IMG/VR virus record: IMGVR_UViG_3300030098_004828
Span: 124,001-188,000 of that record
Length of the DNA: 64,000 bases
Reading direction: 5' to 3' (one strand)
Positions 15,117 through 61,960 of the stretch are shown here, in pieces (position 1 is the first letter of the stretch; each line of letters begins with the position of its first letter). Below the pieces are notes generated by a model. It was not told the origin of the DNA, searched no databases, and worked only from the letters and a program-made list of their open reading frames with translations. The position numbers and the translations under genes are program-made.

Positions 15117-15145
15117 AGTTTAAAATTTTAAAGTTAATATCAGTG

Positions 15146-15187
15146 TTGTACAAGGTTGTTAAGAATAGAAATATGAGCGTAGCGAAT
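15146..15187 (-). promoter_or_regulatory. ACAAGGT + purine spacer + GNA-loop DNA hairpin (candidate early promoter)
   Basis: ACAAGGT 15150-15156; AT-GA-GC-GTA-GC-GA-AT (15173-15187). Confidence 0.65.
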
Positions 15188-15723: not shown

Positions 15724-15745
15724 AAGTATAAGTTTTAGTTCATGA

Positions 15746-15809
15746 GTGTACAAGGTTGTAGGATGAGAAGGAACCCGTCAGGGTTCTGACCCGTAGCGTA
15801 GCGGAGGGT
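15746..15809 (-). promoter_or_regulatory. ACAAGGT + purine spacer + GNA/GNNA-loop DNA hairpins (candidate early promoter)
   Basis: ACAAGGT 15750-15756; GAACCC-GTCA-GGGTTC (15771-15786); ACCC-GTA-GC-GTA-GC-GGA-GGGT (15789-15809). Confidence 0.65.
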
Positions 15810-15895
15810 GCTGGGTGAGGTGTTGGCTTGTTTCTTTTTGAGCGTGAGATTTTTTTTGAGTGATCTGTGAGACCAGAAGCGTGTGTTGTTTTAAA

Positions 15896-15930
15896 GGGGG
15901 GGCAGGGGCTGTTGGCCAACGGGCCGGGGG
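15896..15930 (+). other. G-tract cluster (potential G-quadruplex) at the strand switch
   Basis: G7-CA-G4-CTGTTGGCCAAC-G3-CC-G5. Confidence 0.55.
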
Positions 15931-16096
15931 AGTTTTATGTAGAACCTTCTCACAACTTAAAACATACAAAACTTTTATATAGGGTAAAATTTCACTATAT
16001 TATATATAAGAGGCCCTGGACCATTTTCCTATAAAAAGGTTTGTGAAAGGATCCCTCCCGAGTGTAAATTAATTATTAATGTAAAAATTAAATGTT

Positions 16097-45278: not shown

Positions 45279-45950
45279 ATGACAACAATAGGAGACGTAG
45301 TATCCAGAGTCAGAAGCCAAATAAAAGCAGAGATTCAAGATGCTTTTGTTACTGACAGATACTTATATAGTTTAATCACAAAGAGTGCTCAACTTCTTAT
45401 GAGACGTCAAGATTCTGCTAATAAATTAAAAAAGTTTAATAGTGTATGGAAAACACTCCCATTTGTAGAATTAGAAGAAGTTGATAAGATAGAAGCTTGT
45501 TGTACAGGTATAGAGAGCGGTATGCTTATTAAGCGTACTAAATTAAAACTTCCAACTTTTATGGAAGGATATTGGGGACCACTTATTAGAACAGTTTCTT
45601 CTATTGATGGAAGTATAGAACTACAAGCAACACAACCTGGTACTTTTACATCAATGACAAAAACAACTTCTTTTAAATATAACAAAACAAAATATTTCTG
45701 GTTTATAGATGGTCATTTATATTTTCCAAATATAGACTGGGATGCTGTAAAAGTTGAAGGTATTTTTCAAGAAGATATTTCTTTATGGTTATGTAATGAT
45801 GAAGATAAATGTGTTCCAAGGTATAGACAAGAATGTAATATACCAGAATTTTTATTTGCAGAAATAGAACAACAAGTATTACAACAATTGATGGCAACTA
45901 TAAATGTTCCACAAGAAGATTCAGATAATAAACAAAATGTAAATAGATAA
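45279..45950 (+). CDS. Tail ring protein
   Basis: YFWFIDGHLYFPN...VEGIF; position. Confidence 0.65.
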   Translation: MTTIGDVVSRVRSQIKAEIQDAFVTDRYLYSLITKSAQLLMRRQDSANKLKKFNSVWKTLPFVELEEVDKIEACCTGIESGMLIKRTKLKLPTFMEGYWGPLIRTVSSIDGSIELQATQPGTFTSMTKTTSFKYNKTKYFWFIDGHLYFPNIDWDAVKVEGIFQEDISLWLCNDEDKCVPRYRQECNIPEFLFAEIEQQVLQQLMATINVPQEDSDNKQNVNR

Positions 45951-46870
45951 TGGGAAATAGTGTATCACAAAAATATAGAACGTTTAATCAATTATTAGAA
46001 GATGTTAGTATTGATTTTTCTGGACATGCTCTAGAAGGAAAAATAGAACCTCAACAACTTATCAAAGTTGCAACTAGGGTTAACTATGATTTAGGATTAA
46101 GAATTCATAGAACTAAAGAATATATATTAGATGTTGAACATAGTAAAGCTAAATTACCTGCAGATTTTGCATATTTAAATTATGCTTGGAGTTGTGGATC
46201 ATATACTGTTAGTCAAACAATGCCTTCAGGAACTCATGTAGATACTACTCAACCTAAATATGTTCCAGCTCCAGATGGAGGAGATACAGGGCCTTGTGAA
46301 GATCCTGGATGTAAAGATGTATGTGTTGTTCAAACTTGTCCCACTAAAAATACAGATGGTACAACAACGTATAATAATGAATACATGGTTGTTCAATATA
46401 TGGGTGCAGAACAATACCGTACATATTCTCAATTTTTTCCTCTTAGAATAAAAGAAACATCTCAAGTTCAATGTGATTGTCCTAACATAGGTATTAAGTC
46501 TGTAGATATTGCAGAAATTAGAGATGGTTTTTTATTTACAAGTTTTGAAACAGGTAAAGTATATTTAAATTATCAAGGAGCTATGGAAGATCATGAAGGT
46601 AATTTATTAGTATTAGATCATCCTTATTGTAATGAATATTATGAATATGCTATAAAAGAAAGAATATTAGAAAATATGATTTGGGATGGAGAAAATGTAT
46701 CTCAACAATTAGGGTTAATACAACAAAAATTAAGAGCTGCTAGAAATAATGCTTTAGGTTTTGTTAATACACCAAACTTTAAAGAATATCAAAAATGGCA
46801 TGAGCTTAATAGAAAAGCTCAATATCATAATTATTATAATATGTTTAAAAGTACTCCAACTATAAGATAA
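45950..46870 (+). CDS. Tail ring/tubular protein
   Basis: KAKLPADF, FLFTSFETGKVYLNY motifs; directly upstream of the muzzle. Confidence 0.65.
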   Translation: MGNSVSQKYRTFNQLLEDVSIDFSGHALEGKIEPQQLIKVATRVNYDLGLRIHRTKEYILDVEHSKAKLPADFAYLNYAWSCGSYTVSQTMPSGTHVDTTQPKYVPAPDGGDTGPCEDPGCKDVCVVQTCPTKNTDGTTTYNNEYMVVQYMGAEQYRTYSQFFPLRIKETSQVQCDCPNIGIKSVDIAEIRDGFLFTSFETGKVYLNYQGAMEDHEGNLLVLDHPYCNEYYEYAIKERILENMIWDGENVSQQLGLIQQKLRAARNNALGFVNTPNFKEYQKWHELNRKAQYHNYYNMFKSTPTIR

Positions 46871-46875
46871 TTATA

Positions 46876-49800
46876 ATGGCACGAAAGAAACAACAACAGA
46901 GACCGGATGTCCCTAGACCTGAATTACAAAATACATCTAATGTAGATACAGATGTATTTGTAAAAGGTATGACTAAGGATATGGATGTTGCCTTGACCAA
47001 TAAAGAAAATTGGACTCATGCTGTTAATGCTATTAATAATTCTCATCAAGGTGATGCAGGAACTATAGGAAATGAACCTGCTAATTTAGGATGTGCAGCA
47101 ATACCCTATACCATTATAGGTATGATTCATCTATATGGTGATAAATGGGCTATATTTTCAACAGATGATGTTAATAGTCAAATAGGAATATTTGATGATA
47201 GTCATTGTAAATATGATATTGTTGTTAATGATCCTTGTTTAAATTTTAACAAACGTTATTTAATTACAGGAGCTTCTAAGGAAAGTTTTGAGTGTCAGTG
47301 GTGGGTATACTGGGATGATGGTATAAATCCTTCTAGAGCTCTTAATACAGCGGATGTACCATATATTCAAACTAGTTATACAGAAGATGATGGATGTGTT
47401 ATATATGAAGATCAAATACCTTTAAGACTTGATTGTGAAAAAATAAGATTAAATCCTATCCTTGATGTTCCATGTATTAAGTTGTCAAAAGCAAAAGATG
47501 GTGGTCAATTACAAAATGGATCTTATGAAGCTTATATTGCATATGTAGTAGATGATAATAAAGTAACGGATTATTATAAATCTAATATACAAACTCTTTG
47601 GGATCATCAAGATAATGCAGGATCACTAGATATAGATATTGAAAACTTAGATAAACAATTTGAAAGTTATCAATTAGTTATCTATACAAATGCAGGTATG
47701 AATTCATATGCTGTAGTAGTAGGAACATATAGTACAGAACAATCTCATATTAATATTGATATGATAGATATGTCTGCTTCTACACCAGGTCTTGTAGATC
47801 AATTACCATTATATACTCCTATTTTTGAAAAGTCTGAAAAGATGTATGCGGTTAATGACTATCTTCTAAGACAAGGTCCCACTACAAATTTTGATTTTAA
47901 TTATCAATGTCAAGCTAATAATATAACAGCTAAATGGGTTTCTGTAGAGTATCCGGCAGATTATTATGTAAAAGGTGGTAACAAACCAACTTTTATGAGA
48001 GATGAACAATATTCTTTCTTTATAAGATTTGTTTATAATACAGGTAATAAATCTTCTTCTTATCATATACCAGGACGTGCTGCTGTTGGTATACCTGCAA
48101 ATGATATGGGTGTTCCTCCTGATATGAATCAAACATTATCTGGTGAAGCCGGGTTTCCAAATTGGAAAATAAATAATACTGCATTTCAAACAATGTCTAT
48201 AGATGCAGGTGGTGGTGAAAATATAGGAACATATACAGATGATGGAGGATTAATTGTTGCAAAAGGATGGATGGGATATTGGGAATCAACAGAAAGATAT
48301 CCTAATGATCCAGTTAGATGGTGTGATCTATGTAACACTCCTATAAGACATCATAAATTTCCTGAAGAAGGAACAAGTATTTGGACACAAAGAAACAATC
48401 CAAATAATCAATTTATATATGTATTAGGTGTAGACTTTGATAATATAGAATGGCCAAGATATATAGATAAGGATGGTTTTGATGTACCAATACCAAATAT
48501 AGTTGGTTATGAAATACTAGTGGGATCTAGACAAGGTAATAAATCTATTATAGCAAAAGGTCTTGCTAGAAACATGAGAAGGTATGATATTCAAAATGCT
48601 CAAGGTGAACGTGGTATTGCTGATGCTGAAGGTGGTGATGATAACTTAGAAGGATTAATGCCTAACTATCCATTTAATGATTTAGATAGAGATCCATATT
48701 TATCACAACAAGAAGTTATAAGACAAAGTGATTATGTACCTTATGGTCCTAATTATACAATGCATAATATATTTACATTCCATTCTCCAGATACTTCGTT
48801 TGATAGACCTTTCTTAAGTCCATCTGAAATTAAAAGTTATGGTGTAACAGGAGGATATTCTTTAGGTAGATTTAAAAGATCAGAGGATCATCCTAAACAT
48901 AAATTAATAAGAGATATTGCAGCTATTATTGCAGCTATTATTGGTGCAGGTTATGCTATTATGGAAATGCGTGGTGAAAAGGTTCAAAAAGTAAAAGGAT
49001 CTAAAGCATTATCTATTGGTCAAGATCCAGGACCATATAATCAATCAGATGCACTTAAAGATGAATCAACTATTGATACTACTGCTGGTACAGGTACAGG
49101 TGGTGTAAGTATTGCAGGTGTTTATGCTTCAGGGGGTACAGGTACAGGTGGTACTGCTAATGTTGATATGGATGTTAGTAATGATTCAGGACTTGAAGGT
49201 ACAAACCCTGCTGCTACCGATGATGATGGAATTACTAATCAAGACCTACAAAATATAAGCCCTACTCTTCCTCCTGATCCTAGTGGTGTTGATACTGATA
49301 CAGGTATAGAAACAGTAAATGGTGGTGGTGCAGCTCCAGGTATGGCTGGTAATATAAGTATAACTGATCCAGGTCCTGTTGGTTTTATACCTCCAAGTAT
49401 TGTTACTCAAACATTAACAGCAGATGGTGCTACTGCTGATTATCAGTTAACTTATGGTCCTAGTACATCTCAAGCACAATTAAATGCATATGAAAATATG
49501 CAAGCTTTTAATACCGCACAAGAAAATGATGCACCAGGAACTCCAGCAGGTCAAGAAGGTCAACAAGGATCAGGTGGTACAAGTTCAGGTAATCTTAACA
49601 TTATATCAGGTATTAATATTAATGATATTGCTAATGGATTTCAACCAACACAAGAAAGTGAATTTTCAATGTCTACTACACCTATAGGTGATGCAACTAA
49701 TCTTATTCTTACTGGTGGTCTTCCTAATAGTGTTTCAGGTGCAGAAGAAGATTTCTTACATGATATAAAAAGTAAGGGTGATAATGCTGCAATGCAAACA

Positions 49801-52800
49801 ACTGGTTATACAGGATCTAGTAGAGATGTTGAAATGAAAGGGAGTAAGTATAAATCATTACCAGGATTTTTACAAATAATGTTTAAGACATATTCATTCT
49901 TAAACTTCATGGTTGAAGGTGGTGAAGGAATTATAGAGATGATTTATGAATTTATGAATCCTCAAGACTATGCATATAAATATAATTCTTATGGTATGTA
50001 TAGTGGTAATTTTATTCCACAAATGGGTGATAGACATAGAATAGAATGTAAAAGAGCTAGATACTTATCAAGTGCATTTCAAAATCTTGGACCAGAATAT
50101 AAAATAAATAATTTACATAGACCTAAAACAGTTGTTTTACAAGGAGTTGAAAATCTTGTATCTCCTTCTTCTCCACAATACTGGAGAGATAATTCAAAAT
50201 ATGTATTAGGAGAACTTCCTTCATGGGTATTGCAAAATCCTACACAACCTGTAACAACTAAAATATCCGCTCACTATGTAGGATTAAAATATAGAATAGA
50301 TAATCAATATGGTCAAATACAAAGTATAAGACAACTACCTGTAAAATGTGCAGGGATTTTTAGAAACGCAGCTTTTCCTAGTTCTGCTGATGTTAATAAT
50401 GCAGAACCAAATGAAACTATATGTACTACTTGTGATGAAGAGACAGGACTTATATTTGATGAAAATACTAGATTTAGATCAGAAGTCATATTTGGTGGTG
50501 ATTGTTTCATTAATAGATATAGTGAAAAAGTTATAATGCCATTCTTTTGGGATTTCTTAAAAGGAGAACCAGATGGATATACTTTTGATTATAGATTGCA
50601 TCAAAATGTTCCTTTTGTTAGATTCTGGTATAATTCACAAAAATATGAATTATCTGGATTTGTTAGACCTATTACAGATTTAAGTTTTTCTTGGTTATCT
50701 GATCCTAGTGATCCAGGATTACCTTCAGCTCTTCATAACTTAGATAGAATAGGTAGTGGTAACTATAATGCTATAGATGAAGGATGGTTATCTGGTACTC
50801 CTAATAATGAAGATGATTGGTGGATGACTGCAAACTCAGAAAGTCAATCAGGTATGTTTGGTGATGGATTTGGTGGTCTAGGTGGTGGAACAGGTTGGGG
50901 TTCAGGTACTGATGCTAATACTACTGGTACAACTTATACAGATGGTGGTCCACCTGATACATCAGGAGATAGTGTATCACAATCAACTTCTAACTGGGCA
51001 AGTTCAGGAGGACAAGCAACAAAATCTAATGGAATCTTTACATTAAAGAATGCTTATTGCTATTTACATTCTAGTGGTATAAATGAATTCTTTGTAGAGT
51101 CAGAATTAAACATGGCTCAAAGAGATTGGGATGATAAACCTGCAGGTAGACATTATGATTGGCAAGAGTTTACAGATGTTAATGCATTATTTCATGCAGA
51201 TATTATTAAAGATGGAAACTTTTATAAGTTTGATAGATCTTTAATGTGGAGAAATTTAGGAAGTCAATTATTATCATACGGTTTTGTACAACCATTAAGT
51301 TATGATCCAGTAGTTGCTGAAGAGTGTATGACACATTATCCAAAAAGAATAATGTATTCATTAAGAGCTCAGGATGAAGCTAAAAAAGATTTTTGGAGAG
51401 TTTTCCTTCCATTTAATAAAGAAGACTTTAAAGAGCCTGTAACTACTATTAAACCTATAAATAAAACAGGTGCTGTAATATTATTTCCACATAGATCTCC
51501 TCAAATATGGCAAGGTGTAGATACATTACAAACAGAAGGTAACACTAAAGTTACAATAGGAGATGGAGGTTTATTTGCTGGACCAAGACAAAATATTACA
51601 AATTCAGATCTTCCAAATGAATATGGTTCTTGTGAAAATATGCTTAGTGCAATTAATACACCAGCTGGTTTATTTTATATATCACAACAACAAGGTAAAA
51701 TATTTAACTATACGGGCGGTTTAGAAAATATTGCTGATAGAGGAATGAAACAATGGTTTAATAATTTTCTTCCTTCTAGACTATTAATGGAGTTTCCTGA
51801 AATGGAAGGTTCTATAGATGCAGACAATCCAATTATGGGTATTGGAACTCAATCAGTTTATGATGCTAAACTTGATTTAGTTTACTTTATGAAAAAAGAT
51901 TATGCATTATGTGATCATTCAGGATGTATACAATGGACAGAAGATGATGGATTTGTTTATAATAATACATTATGTAATGATGCAGATCAAATAGCTTCAT
52001 GTCCTGATGGTTATACATTGTATGAAGCTGGAGATGTGCATCCTGGAACAGGAGAAGTTTTAACAGAAGATACTTGTTGTAATATAGTTAGAGATGATTA
52101 TCAAGAGTTTGAAGAAGCTACTATGGATTGTAATACAACAGTTTATGTAGTCCCTGAAATTTTTAATTTTGAAAGACTCCCTAATGATGAAGTTTTAACT
52201 AAGCATGAAAAAAATACAGTTCTTTTTAATGTATCTGATGATGTATTTGAAAACATCAGAGAAAAGAAACCTATGAAAGTTAAACTAAATATTCCTTTCA
52301 TAGATGGTAGAAGAATAAATTTAACTTTAAAGAACTTTGAACCTCATAGAAAAAATACTAGAGTTTTAACAAAAAGTAAAGATGGAACTGTAGAAAGAAA
52401 TTATGTACCTAATATACGTGCATATAGAATAAGAAATAAAGAAATACTTAAAAATGGTAAAGAAGTAAAAGCTACTGGATCCATTATTTTCTCTAGAAAA
52501 GCATTTACAGGTTTCATAACAATAGGTAATCAACAATATGAAATTAGAAGGCGTGGTCAAAATAAATACGCATTAATACATTCTTATGATGTTAAGGAAA
52601 GTCCTTTATTTGCTTGTGATACTAACACATCACACAGCATTCCTGATTCAGTTAAATTAGAAGATTTACCAAGAACAGCAAGACAACTTGCTAAAAGTGG
52701 TAATAGTTCACCTGATCATTGTATTAATTTAGCTGTTACAGTTGATTATTATACATATGATTTTCTTGGTCAAAATTATCAAGACACAAGTGATTGGGCA

Positions 52801-55800
52801 ATGATGTTAGTTGCAGCAGTGAATGAAATATATATGAATGATCTTAATATTTCAATTACAAGTGATTTTATTTATATTTATACAGATGAAAGTGTAGATC
52901 CATTTGCAGATTGTTGTGGAAGCAACCAAAATGATATGCTTCCGGTACTTAGAGATCAATGGGATGGTGATGAACCAGATTTTGATGGTGTTATTAGAAG
53001 TATAGCTACTTTATTTACTGCTAGGGGTTGTGGTGGAGTAGCATATACAGGTGGATTATGTTATAGAAATAATTGGGGTTACAGTGTTAATGGTTTTTGT
53101 GGAAATAACATGCCTTCAGGCACACTTCCAATACAAGGACAAACTACAGAAGGTTATGATATAGAAGATGGTTTTGTGAATCTTACTAATTCATTAACTG
53201 TAAAAATAACAGCTCATGAAATAGGTCATAATGTTGGTACATTACATACACATGATTGTGTATGGGAGCCAGATCCAGTTTATGGTTTTGGTGGATTTAC
53301 AGGTGATACAGGTCAAATTGATATTGGTGGTAACCTAGTTTATTCTATGTTTATAGATAATTGTGAAGACGATTGTGATGAAACAGCAACTGCTGATTGT
53401 GGATCAGAACCTATTGATTCAAGTTGTTGGCCATCTCCTTGGCCTATGCCTTATCAAGAAAATTTAACTAATACAGCATTTGAGTATACTACTTTAATGG
53501 GTTATAATGAAAATTTAGCTTTTCAGGGTTGTATAACTTATGATCAACTTAATGGGATTTTAGGATTTCATCCAATAGTTATGGAACAAGCTATAAACCC
53601 ATGGGTAGATGATGTACAAGCTAATAGTGGTACTTCATGGAATCTTTTTGGAAATCAAGAAGGTGAAACAAATTGTTTATCTTGTGCTGATGTAAATGGT
53701 GAAAATGGTGGAGGTGATGATGATCCTATTTATGAATGTGATGACTTACAAGAATTTTTAGATGCTACAATTAATTCTGAATTAGGATGGCTTGTTGAAC
53801 AAGGTGGATCAGGAGGTTATACACCAACTCAATATTGTAATTATTGTGATAATCCAGTTGCAGATAATATTAATGCAATAGAAGGTTCATTAGATCTATG
53901 TAATTGTTGTACAGGAGGAGAACTTATAGTGGAAGGTTGTACAAATCCAAATGCAACAAACTATAATCCTAATGCTAATGTAGATGATGGATCTTGTGAA
54001 ATTGTAGGTTGTACAGATCAGTTTGCAACTAACTATAATCCAAATGCAAATATGACATGTATGGGTGAAACCGGTTTTATAGAAAATGGTTGTTGTCTTT
54101 ATGATTATAGTTGTAATAATTATTATTTATGGGTTGATGCTACAATTAATTCACAATTAGGTTATGATTGGACTCCAAGTGATTATTGTACTTTTTGCTT
54201 AAATCAAGAATTTTATGCAGATGATCCTATAATGACTCTTGAAAATGCAACAGAATTCTGTAGTTGTTGTAATGGAGAAGATGTAGAGATTTTTGGATGT
54301 ATGGATTCAGAAGCAAATAACTTTAATCCATTTGCAACTACTCCATGTAATGGAACACAAGGAGAATATGGACCTACAATTTCAATTATAAACGGTACAT
54401 TTAGTGGAGGAATTACTATACCAGAAGGAATAGAAAATGTAAATGGAGATTCTGTTCCTGCTGGATATTATTCTCCTACATTTTATTTACCACCAGATGG
54501 ATGGCATGCATGTAAAAATGCTAATTTTAATCCTATTATGGGACAATTAGGTGAAGACTGGCCTAATATTACTACATATGCAAATTCTGGAGGAGGCACT
54601 GGTGGTGGTGGTGTAAACGTTGAAACTGGAGAATGTTGGAATTTTGTTTTACCAGCTTCAGATTTCTTTGGTGATGATAGCTTACCTGATTCTGGACCAC
54701 ATGGTAATATTACACCAGATAATTATACTGATTGGTTCTTTGATAATCTAGGGGATCCTGGAATATGTGGTGGATATTCCAGTATAATAGCAAATGATAT
54801 AATTAATTCAGGTATAAGTACTCACGCATATGGAGATGGTTTTATGGGTATGGCTTGGTCTCCAAGTTTTCGGGAAGATATGCCTTATTATGTTTTTGAA
54901 ACTGGTCAGGAATATGATGCAACTTGGGCGTATGAATGGCATAGAGAAGGAGTGGGACAAGAATTAAGTAGTCCAATGATAGCAAATGTTGAATATACAA
55001 TGAGTGTTGTTGTAGCTAATTCATCTGGTGGTTATATATTAGATGGTTATGAGTGGGAAGCTGCTGGTGTAAGAATATGGGGTGGTAATTGTGCTTGTCC
55101 TAATGATGATAATGGAGGTGAATTATTATGGGAGTCAGAACCTCAATCTGGAAGTTCCGATGTACCTATGGAATGGGTTACACGTACTGGAACATTTACA
55201 CCAACTCAAAATTTTACACATATAACTATAGAACCAGGTAATGGTGGTGAAACATGGAATGGACCATCTACACCTGGTAATGAATGGAATGGACAAACAA
55301 CTAATGGAGAGTCAGGTATATATGGTGCCGGTAATGACGTTTATATATTTTTAGATTATGTTAGTGATATAACTCCAACAGCTATATTAGGTGAAGATAA
55401 TGATTGTTGTGAATATGGATCTGAGGAAGAAGAAGAAGGAGGAGGAGAAGAAACATTAAGTTGTGAACAAATTCAAGAAGATCCTCAAGGTTATATTGAT
55501 ACATTAATTAATGATCCTATAGGTTTAAATTGGCCTCCAATTGAATTTTGTATGTTCTGTAATGGAAGTATACAAAATGAAGAGGTTGCTAGTATTGGTG
55601 AAGTTTGGAGTGCATGTAGTTGTCTTTGTACTGAAGAACCTAGACCTTTACCTGATTGTGATGACATGTGGACTTTTATTAATGATAATATTAATTCACT
55701 GGGAGTTAATTATAATTGGACAGTAGATAATTATTGTACATTTTGTTTAAATCCTTCATTATTTGGAGTTGTTCAAGATGTTGAAGGTGTTTTAGATTAT

Positions 55801-58800
55801 TGTGATTGTCCACAATGTGAGAATACTCCTTATGATCCAAGTAATGAAACAATAGATTGTGAATGTTTTTGTCCTGATGGTTATGATTTAGTATTTAATG
55901 ATCCACCAACTTATACATTAGCAGATCCAGAAATAGATTGCGTTGCTGATGTTATACCTCTTCTTGAAATGCCTACAGTTGAAATATGTGATACTACATT
56001 AGCTGAAAATGCAACATTTGTAACTAACCCAGGTTTAAATGTAGACGGTGGTACATTTGGTGAGATTGGACAAAATAAAACACCATCTCCTTGGATAGTA
56101 TGTATGAGAGGAAGTAATCAAGAGGCACCAGGTTATTATCCTGATGGCTTTTGTTATGACGGAATGGTAGAAGATGGTGTACAATATGATATGACATTTA
56201 CAACCGACACATGGACAGGACAAGGTAATGCTCTATCTGTAGATAATTTGGATTATGTAATGGATCCTTTTAATCAATATGCTATAGATCCTTATGAAGG
56301 AGATGCTTATGTTGGAATGCTTCATAGTTTTAGTTGTGATGGTCTATGTAGTGAAGGTTGTGATGTTGGTCTATGGCAAGAAGGAATGGCACAAGCATTA
56401 GAAGATGCAGATGGAAATCCTACATTTTTATTTGCAAACCAACAATATGTTGGTAAATTCTATGCAACACAATTAGTAGGTTGGAATACACGTCATAGAG
56501 GATACATAGATGAGGAAGAATTTTTAGAAGACGGTATAACTCCAAATCCAACTTTTGGTAATTTTATCTTAAATAATCCTTGGACTTATCCATTAGAAGA
56601 AAATTATCAAGAGCAAGGTGATTTTGCAGGATCTGTAGGATCTGCAGCTGGTGGGGATGCTGTTGATGCAGAAGGAAACCCTGTATCACACAGGATAACT
56701 CCTCAAATAGAAATATGGGGTGGTACTGATCAATGCGGAGTTCAAGGTGAAAACGGTTTATATTTAGGTGGAGAATTTAATTATGAAGGTAATTATAATT
56801 CTGAATTATTATGGAGTTCAGGTCCTATAATGTCTGCAGATAATTGGACAGAATATAATTATGAGTTTACTCCTACAAATGATTGGGCATGGATACATAT
56901 AAGAGTTCAATTACTAATAGATGGAGTTCCAGCAAAAACAGATGAAGATACCACTAATGGAGTTCCAGCAAGAGATAAAGCTACGTATGTAGTTATAGAT
57001 GGTTTTGTAGCTCCAACAGAAGATGTTAAATGCTGCACATGTCCTGAAGGTTATCAAAGAGTATTAAATGATGGAATATATCAAACACCTATATCAGAAC
57101 AAGAGTGTATAAAAGAACATGATGCGGATGGTGCTTACTTAACTTATTCAGATGAGTTTGATGTAATATGTGTAAAGTGGGAGCCTACAATGAATGACTT
57201 AGTATGTTTACAGCAATGGTCAGATATTACAGGTGATTGTGTAGATCCTCAATATGAAGATGATGTAGATCTTATTGAATTAACAGACGAACAATACTTT
57301 AAAGATGTTTCATGGACAGTAAGCTATGATCCAAAAATAAAAGGTTGGATTTCATTCCATGATTGGCATCCGGAACTTAGCATGCCAAGTTTAAATCACT
57401 TCTTAACAACTAATACTTTTGAAGTTGATGATATTTATTGTCCTCCTGGATGGGAATTAAATGATGGAATTTGTTGTCAAAATATTGTTGGTAGTTTTGA
57501 AGGTACTGAAATTATTGAAGAAGAAGATGTTACTATAGATCAAAATCCTGATGAACCTAGAGAAGAATTTTGTCCTATAGATATATATATAGCATTAGAT
57601 TTTTCAGGTTCAAATTTTTCCGTGCCAGGATTTCAAGGTAGTGGGGGTTCTGTTTTTAATGATTACTTTATTAGGGAATTTGTAGATACATTAGATATGC
57701 AAATGGATGGTTCAATTAGTGGAAATATGACAAATGCAACTAATCAAATACAAGTTGGTGTGGGTGCATGGACATCAATGTTACCAATGAATCTAGAACC
57801 TTTGTGTCCTTGGGGTGATTCTGATAGTGCTGGTATTATAAATCAAAATGTAACAGGTTTAACTAATAATGCATTAGAAATATATAATACAGCAAATAGT
57901 ATGATAAATAGTCAGCAGGCTATGTATGGTATAGCGGCTACTACTGGACCTGGAGATACTTATCAAGCGGCTATGTCAGTAGCTTATAATGAATTTAATA
58001 ATACTGTAGGTTCTTCACCTTTAGGTGATAGATCTGGTCAAAATGGTTATCAAAAACATTTAATTATTGTTACAGATGTAACATCTATTTCTCCTTGTAA
58101 TAATAATTGTACTTGTTGTGGTACTGGTAATCCTTATCCTGATCAATCTATGGATTATTATTTACAACTAGCACAAGCTGAAGGATTTACAGTTCATGTA
58201 GTTTGGTCAGGAGCTCCAGGGGGTCAAAGTCTCCAACAAATAATAGATAGAACTGAATGTTTACTTACTTATTCAAACGGACAACTTTATCAAATTGGTG
58301 TAAATAATATAAATGATACAGATGCTGTTGCTGCTAATACACAAGCTGTTGCACAAAATATTGCACGAGATTTAGATTGCACTCTTCCTCCTGATCCTAT
58401 AGAATGCTTATGCCCTGATGATACTTGGACAATGGTTTATTCAGCTGATGGTGGTGATACTTTTACATTAGAAGAAAATCCTGATCCAACTGCAGATTGT
58501 GAACCAGGTAGAACAGCTGTATGTAGAAAAATAAATTGTTATTGTGATGATTCACAAGTAGAATCTGATTTAACTGATATAGATATTACTACAACGGGTG
58601 AATGTAGTGATATTTATGAAGTGGGAGAAGAAGACTATGTTAATCCAAATCCTCTTTTCTGTAGTTATGATTCTGAATATTGTACAACAGGAAGTAATAT
58701 TAGAGGAGGATTATGGAGACATAATTATAGATGTAATTTATTTTCTAATTATTATGATGTTCAATATGGTTGGGAAATTGAAATGGTTGAATCAGTTGGT

Positions 58801-59529
58801 CAAACAGTTAATACTTTAAGAAGTATTGAATATGAAATGGAGGCTTATTTATATAGAAGACCTTTAGACTGTGAAGGAAATGCTATATGTGGATGGACTA
58901 CATGGGATGGTGGAACTCATCCAATATATACTCCTGGTCTTGACATGGATCAAGAATGTACAATGAGAGCTCATCAATTAGATTATAATTTTAATTGGGC
59001 TTATATTTATAATACAGAACAAGTTTCAGGTGATTTACATTTAACTTTGAAACCTAAAAATAATGCTCCAGAAATCAATAATTATCCACAGACAACTATT
59101 GATGAAGAATGTAATGAAAATAGTTTCTATGATATATTGTATGATAAGGTAGAACAAAAATATAGATTTAATCAATTCTGGGATATTACAGCTAATAGAG
59201 GTGAAAATATACAACCCGCAGGAAACTTTGATAGTGGTAGTGGTCCAGATCCTGTTCAACATATTATAAATTTACATTTAAATGGTTATACAAGAGTTTT
59301 AAATTCTTTAAATTTAGATTATGATAAACCACCACTTCAAAGAAAAAAATTCAGACATTATTGGAATAAAGTAACTTTAATGAGAAAACCAATTCCTGTA
59401 ACACCAACAAGTGATATGACGTATGGTGAAACTTATGTTTATGATAAAGATGGAAATCCAGTATTATTGGAAAGAACAAAAATGTTACTTAAATTAGATA
59501 ACGCAAAAATTAATGTATCCTTTAGATAA
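46876..59529 (+). CDS. Giant muzzle (tail stabilisation) protein with inserted metalloprotease, Cys repeats, CBM-like and vWA domains
   Basis: Muzzle-type motifs (FVKGMTKD, GNEP, YWDDGINP, FMRDEQYSF, FHSPD, FGGDCFI, FFVESE, WTVSY...WISFHDW, LWRHN) interrupted by HEIGHNVGTLH and DFSGS domains. Confidence 0.8.
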   Translation: MARKKQQQRPDVPRPELQNTSNVDTDVFVKGMTKDMDVALTNKENWTHAVNAINNSHQGDAGTIGNEPANLGCAAIPYTIIGMIHLYGDKWAIFSTDDVNSQIGIFDDSHCKYDIVVNDPCLNFNKRYLITGASKESFECQWWVYWDDGINPSRALNTADVPYIQTSYTEDDGCVIYEDQIPLRLDCEKIRLNPILDVPCIKLSKAKDGGQLQNGSYEAYIAYVVDDNKVTDYYKSNIQTLWDHQDNAGSLDIDIENLDKQFESYQLVIYTNAGMNSYAVVVGTYSTEQSHINIDMIDMSASTPGLVDQLPLYTPIFEKSEKMYAVNDYLLRQGPTTNFDFNYQCQANNITAKWVSVEYPADYYVKGGNKPTFMRDEQYSFFIRFVYNTGNKSSSYHIPGRAAVGIPANDMGVPPDMNQTLSGEAGFPNWKINNTAFQTMSIDAGGGENIGTYTDDGGLIVAKGWMGYWESTERYPNDPVRWCDLCNTPIRHHKFPEEGTSIWTQRNNPNNQFIYVLGVDFDNIEWPRYIDKDGFDVPIPNIVGYEILVGSRQGNKSIIAKGLARNMRRYDIQNAQGERGIADAEGGDDNLEGLMPNYPFNDLDRDPYLSQQEVIRQSDYVPYGPNYTMHNIFTFHSPDTSFDRPFLSPSEIKSYGVTGGYSLGRFKRSEDHPKHKLIRDIAAIIAAIIGAGYAIMEMRGEKVQKVKGSKALSIGQDPGPYNQSDALKDESTIDTTAGTGTGGVSIAGVYASGGTGTGGTANVDMDVSNDSGLEGTNPAATDDDGITNQDLQNISPTLPPDPSGVDTDTGIETVNGGGAAPGMAGNISITDPGPVGFIPPSIVTQTLTADGATADYQLTYGPSTSQAQLNAYENMQAFNTAQENDAPGTPAGQEGQQGSGGTSSGNLNIISGININDIANGFQPTQESEFSMSTTPIGDATNLILTGGLPNSVSGAEEDFLHDIKSKGDNAAMQTTGYTGSSRDVEMKGSKYKSLPGFLQIMFKTYSFLNFMVEGGEGIIEMIYEFMNPQDYAYKYNSYGMYSGNFIPQMGDRHRIECKRARYLSSAFQNLGPEYKINNLHRPKTVVLQGVENLVSPSSPQYWRDNSKYVLGELPSWVLQNPTQPVTTKISAHYVGLKYRIDNQYGQIQSIRQLPVKCAGIFRNAAFPSSADVNNAEPNETICTTCDEETGLIFDENTRFRSEVIFGGDCFINRYSEKVIMPFFWDFLKGEPDGYTFDYRLHQNVPFVRFWYNSQKYELSGFVRPITDLSFSWLSDPSDPGLPSALHNLDRIGSGNYNAIDEGWLSGTPNNEDDWWMTANSESQSGMFGDGFGGLGGGTGWGSGTDANTTGTTYTDGGPPDTSGDSVSQSTSNWASSGGQATKSNGIFTLKNAYCYLHSSGINEFFVESELNMAQRDWDDKPAGRHYDWQEFTDVNALFHADIIKDGNFYKFDRSLMWRNLGSQLLSYGFVQPLSYDPVVAEECMTHYPKRIMYSLRAQDEAKKDFWRVFLPFNKEDFKEPVTTIKPINKTGAVILFPHRSPQIWQGVDTLQTEGNTKVTIGDGGLFAGPRQNITNSDLPNEYGSCENMLSAINTPAGLFYISQQQGKIFNYTGGLENIADRGMKQWFNNFLPSRLLMEFPEMEGSIDADNPIMGIGTQSVYDAKLDLVYFMKKDYALCDHSGCIQWTEDDGFVYNNTLCNDADQIASCPDGYTLYEAGDVHPGTGEVLTEDTCCNIVRDDYQEFEEATMDCNTTVYVVPEIFNFERLPNDEVLTKHEKNTVLFNVSDDVFENIREKKPMKVKLNIPFIDGRRINLTLKNFEPHRKNTRVLTKSKDGTVERNYVPNIRAYRIRNKEILKNGKEVKATGSIIFSRKAFTGFITIGNQQYEIRRRGQNKYALIHSYDVKESPLFACDTNTSHSIPDSVKLEDLPRTARQLAKSGNSSPDHCINLAVTVDYYTYDFLGQNYQDTSDWAMMLVAAVNEIYMNDLNISITSDFIYIYTDESVDPFADCCGSNQNDMLPVLRDQWDGDEPDFDGVIRSIATLFTARGCGGVAYTGGLCYRNNWGYSVNGFCGNNMPSGTLPIQGQTTEGYDIEDGFVNLTNSLTVKITAHEIGHNVGTLHTHDCVWEPDPVYGFGGFTGDTGQIDIGGNLVYSMFIDNCEDDCDETATADCGSEPIDSSCWPSPWPMPYQENLTNTAFEYTTLMGYNENLAFQGCITYDQLNGILGFHPIVMEQAINPWVDDVQANSGTSWNLFGNQEGETNCLSCADVNGENGGGDDDPIYECDDLQEFLDATINSELGWLVEQGGSGGYTPTQYCNYCDNPVADNINAIEGSLDLCNCCTGGELIVEGCTNPNATNYNPNANVDDGSCEIVGCTDQFATNYNPNANMTCMGETGFIENGCCLYDYSCNNYYLWVDATINSQLGYDWTPSDYCTFCLNQEFYADDPIMTLENATEFCSCCNGEDVEIFGCMDSEANNFNPFATTPCNGTQGEYGPTISIINGTFSGGITIPEGIENVNGDSVPAGYYSPTFYLPPDGWHACKNANFNPIMGQLGEDWPNITTYANSGGGTGGGGVNVETGECWNFVLPASDFFGDDSLPDSGPHGNITPDNYTDWFFDNLGDPGICGGYSSIIANDIINSGISTHAYGDGFMGMAWSPSFREDMPYYVFETGQEYDATWAYEWHREGVGQELSSPMIANVEYTMSVVVANSSGGYILDGYEWEAAGVRIWGGNCACPNDDNGGELLWESEPQSGSSDVPMEWVTRTGTFTPTQNFTHITIEPGNGGETWNGPSTPGNEWNGQTTNGESGIYGAGNDVYIFLDYVSDITPTAILGEDNDCCEYGSEEEEEGGGEETLSCEQIQEDPQGYIDTLINDPIGLNWPPIEFCMFCNGSIQNEEVASIGEVWSACSCLCTEEPRPLPDCDDMWTFINDNINSLGVNYNWTVDNYCTFCLNPSLFGVVQDVEGVLDYCDCPQCENTPYDPSNETIDCECFCPDGYDLVFNDPPTYTLADPEIDCVADVIPLLEMPTVEICDTTLAENATFVTNPGLNVDGGTFGEIGQNKTPSPWIVCMRGSNQEAPGYYPDGFCYDGMVEDGVQYDMTFTTDTWTGQGNALSVDNLDYVMDPFNQYAIDPYEGDAYVGMLHSFSCDGLCSEGCDVGLWQEGMAQALEDADGNPTFLFANQQYVGKFYATQLVGWNTRHRGYIDEEEFLEDGITPNPTFGNFILNNPWTYPLEENYQEQGDFAGSVGSAAGGDAVDAEGNPVSHRITPQIEIWGGTDQCGVQGENGLYLGGEFNYEGNYNSELLWSSGPIMSADNWTEYNYEFTPTNDWAWIHIRVQLLIDGVPAKTDEDTTNGVPARDKATYVVIDGFVAPTEDVKCCTCPEGYQRVLNDGIYQTPISEQECIKEHDADGAYLTYSDEFDVICVKWEPTMNDLVCLQQWSDITGDCVDPQYEDDVDLIELTDEQYFKDVSWTVSYDPKIKGWISFHDWHPELSMPSLNHFLTTNTFEVDDIYCPPGWELNDGICCQNIVGSFEGTEIIEEEDVTIDQNPDEPREEFCPIDIYIALDFSGSNFSVPGFQGSGGSVFNDYFIREFVDTLDMQMDGSISGNMTNATNQIQVGVGAWTSMLPMNLEPLCPWGDSDSAGIINQNVTGLTNNALEIYNTANSMINSQQAMYGIAATTGPGDTYQAAMSVAYNEFNNTVGSSPLGDRSGQNGYQKHLIIVTDVTSISPCNNNCTCCGTGNPYPDQSMDYYLQLAQAEGFTVHVVWSGAPGGQSLQQIIDRTECLLTYSNGQLYQIGVNNINDTDAVAANTQAVAQNIARDLDCTLPPDPIECLCPDDTWTMVYSADGGDTFTLEENPDPTADCEPGRTAVCRKINCYCDDSQVESDLTDIDITTTGECSDIYEVGEEDYVNPNPLFCSYDSEYCTTGSNIRGGLWRHNYRCNLFSNYYDVQYGWEIEMVESVGQTVNTLRSIEYEMEAYLYRRPLDCEGNAICGWTTWDGGTHPIYTPGLDMDQECTMRAHQLDYNFNWAYIYNTEQVSGDLHLTLKPKNNAPEINNYPQTTIDEECNENSFYDILYDKVEQKYRFNQFWDITANRGENIQPAGNFDSGSGPDPVQHIINLHLNGYTRVLNSLNLDYDKPPLQRKKFRHYWNKVTLMRKPIPVTPTSDMTYGETYVYDKDGNPVLLERTKMLLKLDNAKINVSFR

Positions 59530-61901: not shown

Positions 61902-61960
61902 CTATGTTAGATTATGTGGTTAGAATTTAGTATATTATAATATATAGTAGACTTTTTAAT

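What the first reader, a model, noticed from the sequence alone, without database searches (positions are those of the whole stretch)
53690..58690. Muzzle used as a display scaffold: Cys repeats, two CBM-like domains and a vWA domain
Seen: four copies of a C...(D/N)xxINxxxGxxW/Y...Y/FCxY/FC...C.C module (about 53734, 54112, 55462, 55657); three GC(T/M)D/N..A.N(Y/F)NP.A repeats (about 53935, 54007, 54295); two related domains with EG.xQ.L...IWGG..C...ELLW.S...W......FTPT (about 54380-55380 and 56010-57020); and a second insertion holding a vWA domain with the MIDAS motif DFSGS and IIVTD (about 57570-58380). Inserts are bracketed by CP(D/E/P)G(Y/W) linkers. Inference: about half of the 4217 aa is a modular adhesin cassette resembling flavobacterial surface proteins, accreted at two permissive loops. 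This could be a host-range mechanism separate from tail fibres.
Basis: partly seen in the sequence, partly recalled or inferred. Interest (0 to 1): 0.7.

Follow-up and report, generated by a model that had tools for sequence, protein, structure and literature searches.

The report
Phage muzzle carrying protease and adhesins
A marine crAss-like phage has doubled the size of its tail-tip ("muzzle") protein by inserting a protease, two sugar-binding-type domains and an integrin-type adhesion domain into two neighbouring loops. These domains resemble those on Bacteroidota cell surfaces and probably help the phage recognise or cut through its host's surface.

Summary

**Identity.** The protein is a distant but collinear homologue of the PhiCrAss001 muzzle gp44 (hhalign 87% for the N-terminus, 96% for the C-terminus).

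**Size.** In 57 metagenomic relatives the homologue is 1428-2742 aa. The excess here lies in two loops that flank one short conserved segment of the C-terminal propeller part.

**Site 1 (aa 1701-3451).**
- It is absent from all 57 relatives.
- Cys modules follow, then two jelly-roll domains of a family found in marine Bacteroidota T9SS surface proteins. The CBM4/9-like fold was modelled for CBM1 (VIA Z 12.7).

**Site 2 (aa 3521-3940).**
- It is a Cys stalk plus a vWA domain with an invariant MIDAS motif.
- It is not a recent accretion: it was gained once, is kept in most relatives and was lost at least three times.

**Specificity signal.** A near-identical strain (99-100% identity upstream, 89-98% in the adjacent Cys modules) carries a CBM1 allele only 35-42% identical.

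**Function.** A role in host-surface binding or proteolysis is inferred, not shown.

**Verdict.** This is a new variant of a known kind.

The parts
46876..59529 (+). Whole gene: 4217-aa muzzle (tail-tip nozzle) homologue
   Evidence: ORF list and translation. PHROG 37948, virion structural protein. Homologues: Cellulophaga phi4:1 gp042 (MS-proven virion protein) and the csAssE-Sib 'Muzzle protein'. hhalign to PhiCrAss001 gp44.
46876..48975 (+). N-terminal conserved core (aa 1-700)
   Evidence: 43-55% identical to 18 IMG/VR relatives and 27% to the Lbo-JY46 homologue. The family profile aligns at query positions 21-395 to gp44 residues 6-396, Prob 87%, E 3.9e-6.
48976..49875 (+). Low-complexity Gly/Thr/Ser/Ala/Asp-rich stretch (aa 701-1000) with no counterpart in relatives
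   Evidence: No BLASTP hit in 57 relatives. Composition table.
51046..51975 (+). Conserved core block A (aa 1391-1700), the last core segment before insertion site 1
   Evidence: 44-62% identical in all 57 relatives. Aligns to gp44 about 965-1203.
51976..57228 (+). Insertion at site 1 (aa 1701-3451), about 1750 aa
   Evidence: Relatives have 0-35 aa here, apart from an unrelated 402-aa insert in L004. No segment of aa 1701-3390 hits any of the 57 relatives. tblastn of aa 2272-3939 against 50,697 GenBank phage records gave no match.
52000..52014 (+). First CPDGY linker motif (aa 1709-1713)
   Evidence: Regex and shuffles.
52108..52722 (+). Pro-domain-like segment (aa 1745-1949), Lys/Arg-rich, ending in PLFACDT
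   Evidence: Predicted to pack on the catalytic domain: ipSAE 0.81 against best control 0.17. Contacts include the zinc-site residues and the FAC segment. There is no Pfam hit, so the identity is inferred.
52723..53688 (+). M12B (reprolysin-like) zinc metalloprotease domain, HEIGHNVGTLH at aa 2114-2124 (nt 53215-53247)
   Evidence: Pfam Reprolysin_5/4/2/3, E 1.4e-12 to 3.5e-8, above the curated cut-offs.
53716..54366 (+). Cys block A: IN module 1, GCTD repeats 1 and 2, IN module 2, GCTD repeat 3
   Evidence: The GCTD units match the consensus of 2040 units drawn from the listed top hits, up to 42 per protein; 4102 library proteins hit at E<=1e-3. DNA copies 53934-53979 and 54006-54051 are 83% identical.
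54373..55395 (+). CBM-like jelly-roll domain 1 (aa 2500-2840); swapped allele in a near-identical strain
   Evidence: AF2 model pLDDT 60.7, pTM 0.66. Foldseek PDB: CBM70, CBM4-2, gingipain adhesin domains, E 4e-5. VIA-align Z 12.7. AFDB CenC-type CBM and T9SS proteins. Cellular-family HMM E 3e-18. Only 35-42% aa identity to L061, against 89-100% on either side.
55441..55866 (+). Cys block B: IN modules 3 and 4
   Evidence: Alignment A6. HMM hits.
55852..55953 (+). Second CPDGY linker (aa 2993-3026), homologous to the Cys stalk of site 2
   Evidence: The HMM built from relatives' site-2 cassettes hits it, E 3.9e-5.
55963..57051 (+). CBM-like jelly-roll domain 2 (aa 3030-3392), followed by the CPEGY linker at aa 3389
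   Evidence: Cellular-family HMM E 6e-15. Aligned in A4. Fold not modelled separately.
57229..57435 (+). Conserved core block B (aa 3452-3520), which separates the two insertion sites
   Evidence: 57-73% identical among the best hits listed, and found in all 57 relatives. Aligns to gp44 about 1204-1231.
57436..58695 (+). Insertion at site 2 (aa 3521-3940): CPPGW stalk, vWA domain, C-terminal Cys-rich stalk
   Evidence: Relatives-only HMM E 1.7e-35. Present in 50 of 57 relatives. Absent from L057, L058 and phi4:1.
57577..58371 (+). vWA alpha/beta core (aa 3568-3832). MIDAS residues D3575, S3577, S3579 (nt 57598-57612), T3694, and T3733-D3734 (IIVTD at nt 58063-58077)
   Evidence: D-x-S-x-S and T-D are invariant in 40 sequences. 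Pfam VWA in relatives, best E 9.4e-8. Profile search of PDB sequences hits integrin I domains at E 0.009. AF2 model plus Foldseek: SpaC, integrin beta-I, PitA, PilB, E 4e-6.
58696..59526 (+). C-terminal conserved core (aa 3941-4217)
   Evidence: About 41-43% identical in the closest relatives, and found in all 57. Aligns to gp44 up to residue 1304.
45950..46870 (+). Upstream neighbour (306 aa), a candidate ring protein
   Evidence: BLASTP to phi4:1 gp043 (E 2.5e-6) and a weak hit to PhiCrAss001 gp43, ring protein R1 (E 0.001, 43 aa). PHROG virion structural protein.

Best explanation
The gene encodes the tail-tip muzzle of an uncultured marine, distantly crAss-like podovirus whose host is probably a Bacteroidota (Flavobacteriia-type) bacterium. 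The conserved core is collinear with PhiCrAss001 gp44 at both ends, and two adjacent loops of its C-terminal propeller part carry add-on modules.

Loop 2 holds a disulfide-rich stalk that displays a vWA domain with a complete, conserved metal-ion-dependent adhesion site. This module is old in the clade.

Loop 1 holds a lineage-specific cassette of about 1750 aa:
- an M12B zinc protease with its own pro-domain, probably latent through a cysteine-switch-like contact;
- short Cys-rich spacer modules;
- two CBM4/9-like jelly-roll domains taken from, or shared with, the surface-protein repertoire of marine Bacteroidota.

If the muzzle is a hexamer as in PhiCrAss001, each virion would present about 6 proteases, 12 jelly-roll binding domains and 6 vWA domains around the tail tip.

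The most likely role is primary engagement of the host envelope: binding a surface glycan or protein, and possibly cutting a protein layer, before DNA and cargo ejection. CBM1 would act as an exchangeable specificity determinant.

Shown: the architecture, the homology, the folds, the insertion sites, the conservation pattern and the allele swap. Inferred: hexamer stoichiometry, outward display, the ligands, protease activity and latency, and the effect on host range.
For: Muzzle identity:
- hhalign of the family profiles to gp44 gives Prob 87% (E 3.9e-6) for the N-terminus and 96.2% (E 2.5e-9) for the C-terminus, both collinear.
- The csAssE-Sib homologue is annotated as a muzzle protein.
- phi4:1 gp042 is a virion protein by MS.
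- The upstream neighbour resembles ring protein gp43.
- TerL is related to crAss-like terminases.

Insertions:
- Relatives' homologues are 1428-2742 aa.
- Site 1 is 0-35 aa in 56 of 57 relatives, and site 2 is 6-809 aa.

Folds and families:
- vWA.
- CBM-like.
- M12B.
- Pro-domain packing on the zinc site: 0.81 against 0.17 for the best control. That mark was reached by 51 of 78 solved complexes and 2 of 108 mismatched pairs. The three runs agree in at least 60% of contacts, and the partner's pLDDT is at least 68.

Link to Bacteroidota surface proteins:
- Homologues carry signal peptides and Por_Secre_tail, CHU_C, SprB or MAM domains. One is named 'gliding motility-associated-like protein'.

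Selection signals:
- The MIDAS motif is invariant across 40 divergent sequences.
- CBM1 is 35-42% identical between two strains that are 99-100% identical upstream and 89-98% identical in the adjacent Cys modules.

Modular series at site 2: none, linker only, linker plus vWA, PA14-like plus vWA.
Against: - No ligand, activity or virion structure is available, and the phage is uncultured.
- The models are of middling confidence (pLDDT 68 and 61) with long unmodelled loops.
- The window's own vWA and CBM segments miss the Pfam HMMs.
- The insertion sites were mapped onto gp44 by profile alignment only, so whether the loops face outward was not checked on coordinates.
- The middle of the protein (the crass-domain equivalent) did not align to gp44.
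- The CBM1 swap rests on one variant contig (L061, run X9).
- A jelly-roll fold does not prove sugar binding: gingipain adhesin and MAM domains of the same fold bind proteins.
- The vWA module was lost in at least three lineages, so it is dispensable in some contexts.
Confidence: 0.6

Rival explanations
1. The binding domains attach the virion to non-host material where Bacteroidota feed, such as algal polysaccharide particles, gels or mucus. This would raise encounter rates, as the Ig-like Hoc domains do in the 'bacteriophage adherence to mucus' model. The true receptor-binding proteins would be separate tail fibres.
For: The CBM1 model matches porphyran-, alginate-, hyaluronan- and xylan-binding modules. 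The domain family is shared with secreted and surface proteins of marine Bacteroidota, which are polysaccharide degraders. The phage is found widely in marine plankton metagenomes.
Against: The location on the muzzle, at the DNA-exit end, favours host contact. An allele swap confined to one binding domain is typical of receptor specificity. The protease has no obvious role in particle adherence. None of these points excludes this rival.
Confidence: 0.2
2. The cassette is mainly an enzyme. The M12B protease acts as a protein 'depolymerase' that clears a proteinaceous host coat (T9SS-anchored adhesins, SprB-like filaments or an S-layer). The CBM-like, Cys and vWA modules only serve as substrate-targeting exosites, as in gingipains or meprins.
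For: The HExxHxxGxxH motif is intact and Pfam scores exceed the cut-offs. A pro-domain is predicted on the zinc site. The fold matches to gingipain adhesin domains and to MAM domains of astacin and meprin are to modules that sit next to proteases in those proteins.
Against: The vWA module long predates the protease and occurs without it in 50 relatives. The protease segment is 88-91% conserved between strains, while variation is concentrated in CBM1. No activity data exist. Activation by removing the pro-domain would nick the muzzle chain.
Confidence: 0.15
3. The inserts are tolerated passengers: captured host gene fragments in permissive loops, or merely stabilising decoration with no role in adsorption.
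For: Site 2 modules have been lost repeatedly. Site 1 is empty in nearly all relatives.
Against: The ORF is intact over 12.6 kb. The MIDAS residues are invariant in 40 sequences. Conserved family motifs are kept in both CBM-like domains. The same genotype is recovered from 2014 to 2025.
Confidence: 0.04
4. The long ORF is an assembly chimera of a phage gene and bacterial surface-protein genes.
For: The GCTD repeat is shared with many other organisms in the same metagenomes (depth spike at 53857-54023). Such sharing could mislead an assembler.
Against: An independent Logan contig (L061) runs from the core across the junction into the insert at 99% identity. A contig of run X12 bridges 51908-52071 with no differences. 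Contigs of X9 and X10 cover CBM2, the core block and vWA contiguously. The reading frame is continuous.
Confidence: 0.01

Closest known systems
PhiCrAss001 gp44 muzzle protein (Bayfield et al., Nature 2023; PMC10172136)
   Same: Collinear profile-level homology at both ends. The gene follows a ring-protein-like gene. The paper already notes that muzzle length varies through insertions.
   Different: - gp44 is 1371 aa against 4217 aa here.
- The reported insertions are in the crass and IG2 domains, whereas here the two sites map to the C-terminal propeller part (about gp44 1203 and 1231).
- gp44 carries no protease, CBM-like or vWA module.
- Plain phmmer and a profile search of PDB sequences do not connect the two proteins.
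Cellulophaga phage phi4:1 gp042 (Lightbulbvirus), 2289-aa virion structural protein
   Same: Closest cultured homologue. The same core blocks occur in the same order and with the same gene neighbourhood. Its host is a marine flavobacterium.
   Different: Only 22-37% identical in the blocks. It has no insert at site 2 (residues 2096-2102 are contiguous). About 300 aa of unrelated sequence sit between blocks A and B.
vWA-bearing tip adhesins and integrins (SpaC, PitA, PilB minor pilin, integrin beta-I and alpha-I domains)
   Same: These are the best structural matches to the site-2 model. They share the DxSxS...T...D MIDAS motif and the topology of a vWA domain displayed from a loop of a beta-rich scaffold.
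   Different: No detectable common ancestry beyond the vWA superfamily. Here the scaffold is a phage propeller blade with a Cys-rich stalk, and the ligand is unknown.
N-terminal CBM-like domains of marine Bacteroidota T9SS proteins (CHU_C or Por_Secre_tail C-termini, SprB repeats, MAM); CBM4/9/22-type jelly rolls
   Same: Both window domains are hit by the HMM built from the cellular proteins. The motifs are shared, as is the Lys/Arg-poor acidic composition. GCTD repeats co-occur in these proteins.
   Different: The window copies carry large extra loops (341-363 aa against about 220 aa). They sit inside a virion protein and miss the Pfam CBM_4_9 model.
Protease-plus-adhesin mosaics: gingipains (protease with cleaved adhesin domains) and meprin/astacin (M12A with MAM and EGF)
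   Same: The order is a zinc or cysteine protease followed by jelly-roll adhesion modules and EGF-like Cys linkers. The folds match.
   Different: This is an analogy of architecture only. The protease here is M12B-like and the whole unit is embedded in a phage tail protein.

Membership tests
crAss-type muzzle protein (PhiCrAss001 gp44 family) | N-terminal ring-joining/propeller/IG1 region homologous and collinear with gp44 | tested here: met
   hhalign of the 20-sequence profile: query positions 21-395 against gp44 6-396, Prob 87%, E 3.9e-6. Moderate strength.
crAss-type muzzle protein (PhiCrAss001 gp44 family) | C-terminal propeller region homologous and collinear with gp44 | tested here: met
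   hhalign of the insert-free relatives' profile against gp44 965-1304, Prob 96.2%, E 2.5e-9.
crAss-type muzzle protein (PhiCrAss001 gp44 family) | Central 'crass fold' domain grafted on IG2 | not tested
   The middle of the protein (aa about 400-1390) did not align to gp44 and was not modelled.
crAss-type muzzle protein (PhiCrAss001 gp44 family) | Gene lies directly after a ring (tail barrel) protein gene | tested here: inconclusive
   The upstream 306-aa ORF hits phi4:1 gp043 (E 2.5e-6) and gp43/R1 only weakly (43 aa, E 0.001 in a small database).
crAss-type muzzle protein (PhiCrAss001 gp44 family) | Hexamer closing the tail tip | not testable with these tools
   Needs a virion reconstruction.
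von Willebrand factor A domain | MIDAS motif DxSxS...T...D | tested here: met
   D3575, S3577, S3579 and T3733-D3734 are invariant, and T3694 nearly invariant, in 40 sequences.
von Willebrand factor A domain | Alpha/beta Rossmann-like fold matching solved vWA domains | tested here: met
   The AF2 model shows alternating beta-alpha elements. The leading Foldseek PDB hits are vWA-containing proteins, E down to 3.8e-6 and probability 1.0, but TM scores are low (about 0.3) because of disordered loops and the flanking stalk.
von Willebrand factor A domain | Match to the Pfam VWA/VWA_2 models | tested here: not met
   The window's own segment gives no hit at E<=1. Among relatives, 4 of 40 hit VWA (best E 9.4e-8) and 7 of 40 hit VWA_2. 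The family profile against PDB sequences hits integrin I domains at E 0.009.
CBM4/9/22-like (CenC-type) carbohydrate-binding jelly roll | Beta-jelly-roll fold matching solved CBMs | tested here: met
   CBM1 model: VIA-align Z 12.7-10 to porphyran, alginate, CBM4-2, CBM70 and CBM22 modules. Foldseek E 4e-5. AFDB CenC-domain clusters E 3e-7. CBM2 was not modelled; it is linked by HMM.
CBM4/9/22-like (CenC-type) carbohydrate-binding jelly roll | Match to Pfam CBM_4_9 | tested here: not met
   No Pfam hit at E<=1. Only a language-model lead.
CBM4/9/22-like (CenC-type) carbohydrate-binding jelly roll | Binds a carbohydrate | not testable with these tools
   The same fold also occurs in protein-binding gingipain adhesin and MAM domains.
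M12B (reprolysin/adamalysin-like) metallopeptidase | Pfam Reprolysin family match above the curated cut-off | tested here: met
   Reprolysin_5 scores 48.7 bits against a cut-off of 27. Reprolysin_4, _2 and _3 also pass.
M12B (reprolysin/adamalysin-like) metallopeptidase | Zinc-binding HExxHxxGxxH | tested here: met
   HEIGHNVGTLH at aa 2114-2124.
M12B (reprolysin/adamalysin-like) metallopeptidase | Pro-domain with a cysteine switch over the zinc | tested here: inconclusive
   The predicted interface scores 0.81 against 0.17 for the best control. It includes H2114, E2115, H2118, H2124 and the PLFAC(1914)DT segment. There is no Pfam pro-peptide hit, and zinc coordination was not assessed.
Diversity-generating retroelement target | Template/variable repeat pair, with variation limited to substitutions | tested here: not met
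   No direct repeat of 35 nt or more involves 54400-55340. The CBM1 alleles differ by many indels.

The most novel reading that the evidence does not exclude
A phage has grafted a complete host-type secreted surface protein into its DNA-exit nozzle. The captured unit is a pro-M12B protease, Cys spacers and two CBM-like modules: in effect a Bacteroidota T9SS cargo without its signal peptide and sorting domain. It would work as a contact-activated protein 'depolymerase' with swappable targeting domains. That would be a receptor-recognition and penetration device built on the muzzle itself, independent of tail fibres, and it would make the muzzle propeller a general display platform in marine crAss-like phages.
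Probability: 0.2. Interest if true: 0.8.

Novelty: new variant of a known kind. Interest (0 to 1): 0.6.

Why it matters
How crAss-like phages and their marine relatives recognise Bacteroidota hosts is largely unknown, and the muzzle has only been proposed to touch the cell surface. This locus gives a concrete, testable case.

- Two defined loops of the muzzle accept whole folded modules.
- A natural series runs from no insert to a 1750-aa protease-plus-lectin cassette.
- A conserved MIDAS site points to a metal-dependent ligand contact.
- A binding domain is exchanged between otherwise near-identical strains.

The locus also links phage tail-tip modules to an unannotated but very widespread family of marine Bacteroidota surface-protein domains and Cys repeats. 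That link could guide host prediction and receptor discovery. The two loops could also serve as insertion sites for engineered display on podovirus tails.

Tried and rejected
- **PDB sequence searches.** Direct phmmer of the whole protein against PDB sequences gave nothing. A profile of the N-terminal 700 aa against PDB sequences also missed gp44. Only profile-against-sequence hhalign worked.
- **Curated family libraries.** Pfam and NCBIfam on the individual pieces gave nothing for the Cys modules, CBM-like domains, vWA or linkers.
- **Word-index homologue searches.** CBM1 alone gave 2 weak hits. The pro-domain plus protease segment gave only the strain fragment P0001.
- **Exhaustive representative search of aa 2272-3400.** The GCTD repeat swamped it, so it gave no direct CBM or IN-module relatives.
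- **IN modules.** They have no relatives among the fetched proteins, and the ESM Atlas gave only sub-threshold leads. Their fold and origin remain unknown.
- **A length coincidence.** A 4217-aa cluster member (P0151) looked like the window protein but is an unrelated repeat protein.
- **DGR-type hypervariation of CBM1.** Rejected.
- **Assembly chimera.** Rejected.
- **Insert-less variant.** I looked for one as a joint across site 1 in four more runs. None was seen, but coverage was thin.
- **L004's own site-1 insert.** It shows only a weak likeness to the start of the vWA cassette (Prob 63%), which I leave open.

Full report
**1. What is there**

The finding lies inside a single uninterrupted ORF, 46876-59529 on the + strand, encoding 4217 aa. 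The finding's coordinates correspond to aa 2272-3939.

A regex scan finds every motif at the stated place:
- four IN modules (aa 2296, 2421, 2875, 2936);
- three GC(T/M)(D/N)..A.N(Y/F)NP.A repeats (aa 2354, 2378, 2474);
- the IWGG / ELLW.S / FTPT triad twice;
- DFSGS (aa 3575) and IIVTD (aa 3730);
- four CP.G(Y/W) motifs (aa 1709, 2999, 3389, 3522).

In 2000 shuffles of the protein the linker motif averages 0.04 occurrences against 4 observed. The composite patterns never occurred. DxSGS alone is not improbable.

The four IN modules share five invariant Cys plus I-N. An HMM built from two copies finds the other two.

**2. The sequence is genuine**

The stretch 53690-58690 is held at about 100% in five marine metagenome runs and partly in a dozen more, from several studies dated 2014-2025. 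Contigs identical to the window occur in X6, X7, X11, X12 and X14, and diverged variants in X9 and X10.

An independent 4.7-kb Logan contig (L061) runs from the conserved core across the junction into the insert at about 99% identity. An X12 contig bridges 51908-52071 without a difference. I therefore reject a chimera.

**3. Which protein it is**

- PHROGs gives only a 'virion structural protein' family, whose profile is as long as Cellulophaga phage phi4:1 gp042 (2289 aa).
- tblastn of the first 1700 aa finds phi4:1/phi17:2 gp042 (a virion protein by MS/MS), Flavobacterium FpV phages, Leptolyngbya phage Lbo-JY46 (1654 aa) and the epsilon-crAss-like phage csAssE-Sib. The csAssE-Sib depositors call that gene 'Muzzle protein'.
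- Plain sequence searches do not reach the solved PhiCrAss001 muzzle. Profile comparison does: the N-terminal profile aligns to gp44 residues 6-396 (Prob 87%, E 3.9e-6). The C-terminal profile, built from insert-free relatives, aligns to gp44 965-1304 (Prob 96.2%, E 2.5e-9). Both alignments are collinear.
- The 306-aa ORF just upstream resembles phi4:1 gp043 and, weakly, the ring protein gp43 that precedes gp44.
- TerL is 22-26% identical to crAss-like terminases.

So 'muzzle' is justified as homology. The phage, however, is a deep marine relative and not a classified crassvirus.

**4. Where the extra half sits**

A scan of IMG/VR returned 57 relatives, 44-62% identical in a core block. Their homologues are 1428-2742 aa, mostly about 2050 aa.

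Segment-wise BLASTP shows that all core blocks are present in all 57. These blocks are aa 1-700, 1001-1290, 1391-1700, about 3452-3520 and 3941-4217. In contrast, nothing from aa 1701-3390 is found in any relative.

Between block A and block B the relatives have 0-35 aa, except L004 with an unrelated 402 aa. The window has about 1750 aa there (site 1). Between block B and the C-terminal block the relatives have 6-809 aa, and the window has 420 aa (site 2).

The two sites flank a single conserved segment of about 70 aa. By the gp44 alignment they correspond to about residues 1203 and 1231, which lie in the C-terminal propeller part. The published description places IG2 plus the crass domain at residues 318-1021 and reports length variation there (PMC10172136).

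Together the two inserts make up about 2170 of 4217 aa. None of aa 2272-3939 matches any of 50,697 GenBank phage records.

**5. Site 2: the vWA module**

- The segment aa 3521-3940 hits 50 of 57 relatives. A relatives-only HMM scores it at E 1.7e-35.
- In a 40-sequence alignment (20-32% identity to the window sequence) the residues D-x-S-x-S, T-D and the Cys of the flanking stalk are invariant.
- The window copy misses the Pfam models. Among relatives, 4 hit VWA (best E 9.4e-8), 7 hit VWA_2 and 6 hit cEGF in the linkers.
- The family profile hits integrin alpha-1/alpha-2 I domains in PDB sequences at E about 0.009, aligned on the MIDAS motif.
- The AF2 model (pLDDT 68) has the alternating beta-alpha pattern, and confident beta-strands at both ends form a stalk.
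- The leading Foldseek PDB hits are vWA-containing proteins: SpaC, integrin beta-I, PitA and PilB (E down to 3.8e-6, probability 1.0, low TM).
- vWA domains also occur in other viral proteins, including phage virion proteins.

On a core-block tree, the two relatives without any site-2 insert (L057, L058) branch first. All 49 others form one supported clade. Linker-only states (L040, L009, L014/L016) are nested within it, which implies one gain and at least three losses. L008 has added a PA14-like domain.

The vWA insert is therefore old and conserved. It is not a recent accretion.

**6. Site 1: a protease-plus-lectin cassette**

The insert begins at aa 1701 with a CPDGY linker, 570 aa upstream of the finding.

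*Protease.* aa 1950-2131 match four Reprolysin (M12B) Pfam families above their cut-offs, with an intact HEIGHNVGTLH.

*Pro-domain.* The preceding Lys/Arg-rich segment (aa 1745-1949) is predicted to pack on the catalytic domain.
- Score 0.81 against 0.17 for the best control.
- That mark was reached by 51 of 78 solved complexes and 2 of 108 mismatched pairs.
- The three runs agree in at least 60% of their contacts, and the partner's pLDDT is at least 68.
- The contacts include the zinc ligands and the PLFAC(1914)DT segment.

This is consistent with a cysteine-switch-type latent protease but does not prove one.

*Cys block A.* It holds two IN modules and three GCTD repeats. These 24-aa two-Cys repeats belong to a very large unannotated family. 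That family has 4102 proteins at E<=1e-3 and up to 42 units per protein, and its consensus is GCTDPxAxNY(N/D)PxA(N/T)xDDGSCxY. Some members carry T9SS sorting domains or are from Flavobacteriales MAGs.

*CBM1 and CBM2.* Their direct similarity is marginal. Both are hit by an HMM built only from cellular homologues (E 3e-18 and 6e-15). Those homologues are about 250-aa secreted proteins, or N-terminal domains of larger marine proteins with MAM, SprB or CHU_C domains. One is named 'gliding motility-associated-like protein'.

The CBM1 model (pLDDT 61, pTM 0.66, confident core strands) gives these matches:
- porphyran-, alginate-, xylan- and hyaluronan-binding CBMs;
- gingipain adhesin domains and Stig cyclases;
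- several phage receptor-binding or baseplate proteins.

The scores are VIA-align Z 10-12.7, Foldseek E 4e-5, and AFDB CenC-type and T9SS clusters at E 3e-7. CBM2 was not modelled.

*Composition.* The inserts are almost free of Lys and Arg (K 0.5%, R 1.0-1.7%, against 4.7% and 4.2% in the core). The cellular homologues and the relatives' vWA modules share this feature.

**7. Variation among close relatives**

Compared with L061 (run X9), amino-acid identity by segment is:

| Segment | aa identity |
|---|---|
| Core and pro-domain | 99-100% |
| Protease | 88-91% |
| Cys block A | 98% |
| CBM1 | 35-42%, with many indels |
| Cys block B | 89% |

Downstream, the X9 and X10 variants differ by 2-9% at the nucleotide level. 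Short replaced patches lie in CBM2 (56482-56574) and in a disordered vWA loop (57765-57847).

No template/variable repeat pair exists. This is therefore cassette exchange by recombination, not DGR mutagenesis. It is also the best available hint of a specificity function.

**8. Mechanism**

I take the hexameric tail-tip position from PhiCrAss001. On that basis the most economical reading is a ring of display arms emerging from one propeller blade per subunit.
- A conserved MIDAS adhesion module provides a metal-dependent contact.
- In this lineage, a latent metalloprotease is tethered to two lectin-type domains.
- CBM1 sets the specificity.

The shown and inferred steps are listed under the best explanation.

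The rivals are these:
- adherence to algal or particle polysaccharides rather than to the host;
- a mainly enzymatic role for the cassette;
- passenger domains with no function in adsorption.

**9. Novelty**

Three things are already known: muzzle length variation by insertion, CBM-like modules in phage receptor-binding proteins, and vWA domains in virion proteins.

Four things are new here:
- the location of the insertion sites;
- the size and content of the site-1 cassette, a complete pro-M12B protease with host-type lectin domains inside a nozzle protein;
- the gain/loss series at site 2;
- the CBM1 swap.

I rate it a new variant of a known kind, of moderate to high interest.

Noticed in passing
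window 52723-57051 and 57436-58695: The inserted domains are almost devoid of Lys and Arg (K 0.5%, R 1.0-1.7%, against K 4.7% and R 4.2% in the core) and are strongly acidic. The pro-domain-like segment just before them is Lys/Arg-rich (K 7.6%, R 6.8%). The cellular CBM-like homologues and the relatives' vWA modules share the K/R poverty. The reason is unknown. Possibilities are protease resistance, a Ca-binding acidic surface, or inheritance from marine secreted proteins.
   Followed up: partly
window 48976-49875 and 50746-51045: Two low-complexity Gly/Thr/Ser/Ala/Asp-rich stretches (aa 701-1000 and 1291-1390) in the middle of the muzzle have no counterpart in any of 57 relatives. They add about 400 aa on top of the two inserts.
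   Followed up: no
window 53857-54023: In metagenome contigs the depth over the first two GCTD repeats is 10-60 times that of the flanks, with many loose ends. The repeat is therefore shared at DNA level with many other organisms in the same waters. No Pfam or NCBIfam model covers it, even though 4102 library proteins hit it.
   Followed up: partly
L008:11102-13525: A relative carries an 809-aa site-2 insert with three CPPGY linkers and a PA14-like domain (Pfam E 0.004). Its vWA domain has changed MIDAS positions.
   Followed up: partly
L004:10916-12118: The window's nearest relative has its own 402-aa insert at site 1, opening with a CCPEDAIY...C linker. It is weakly similar to the start of the vWA cassette but lacks a MIDAS motif (Prob 63%). 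It may be a degenerate duplicate of the site-2 module.
   Followed up: partly
L061 (Logan contig), relative to window 51390, 51891, 52223, 53128: Four single-base indels break the reading frame of the variant contig into several called genes. They are probably assembly or sequencing errors rather than a real pseudogene, but this was not checked with reads.
   Followed up: no
window 43488-44696: A DNA repair exonuclease gene (PHROG 704, E 3e-48) sits among the tail structural genes, just upstream of the ring-like genes and the muzzle.
   Followed up: no
window 59529-61901: The 790-aa ORF directly after the muzzle overlaps its stop codon. It includes the lowest-GC stretch of the window (0.237 at 60001-62000) and has no PHROG hit. 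BLASTP found no similarity to phi4:1 gp041, the 'tail protein' at the same position.
   Followed up: partly
window 27834-27971: A Lys/Glu-rich purine-rich repeat tract lies near the start of the 430-aa ORF between the portal and major capsid genes, as in scaffold-like proteins.
   Followed up: no
window about 13000-16000: Coding strand and GC skew both switch sign here: minus-strand genes up to about 14.4 kb, plus-strand genes from about 17.5 kb. This marks the border between two divergent gene modules.
   Followed up: no
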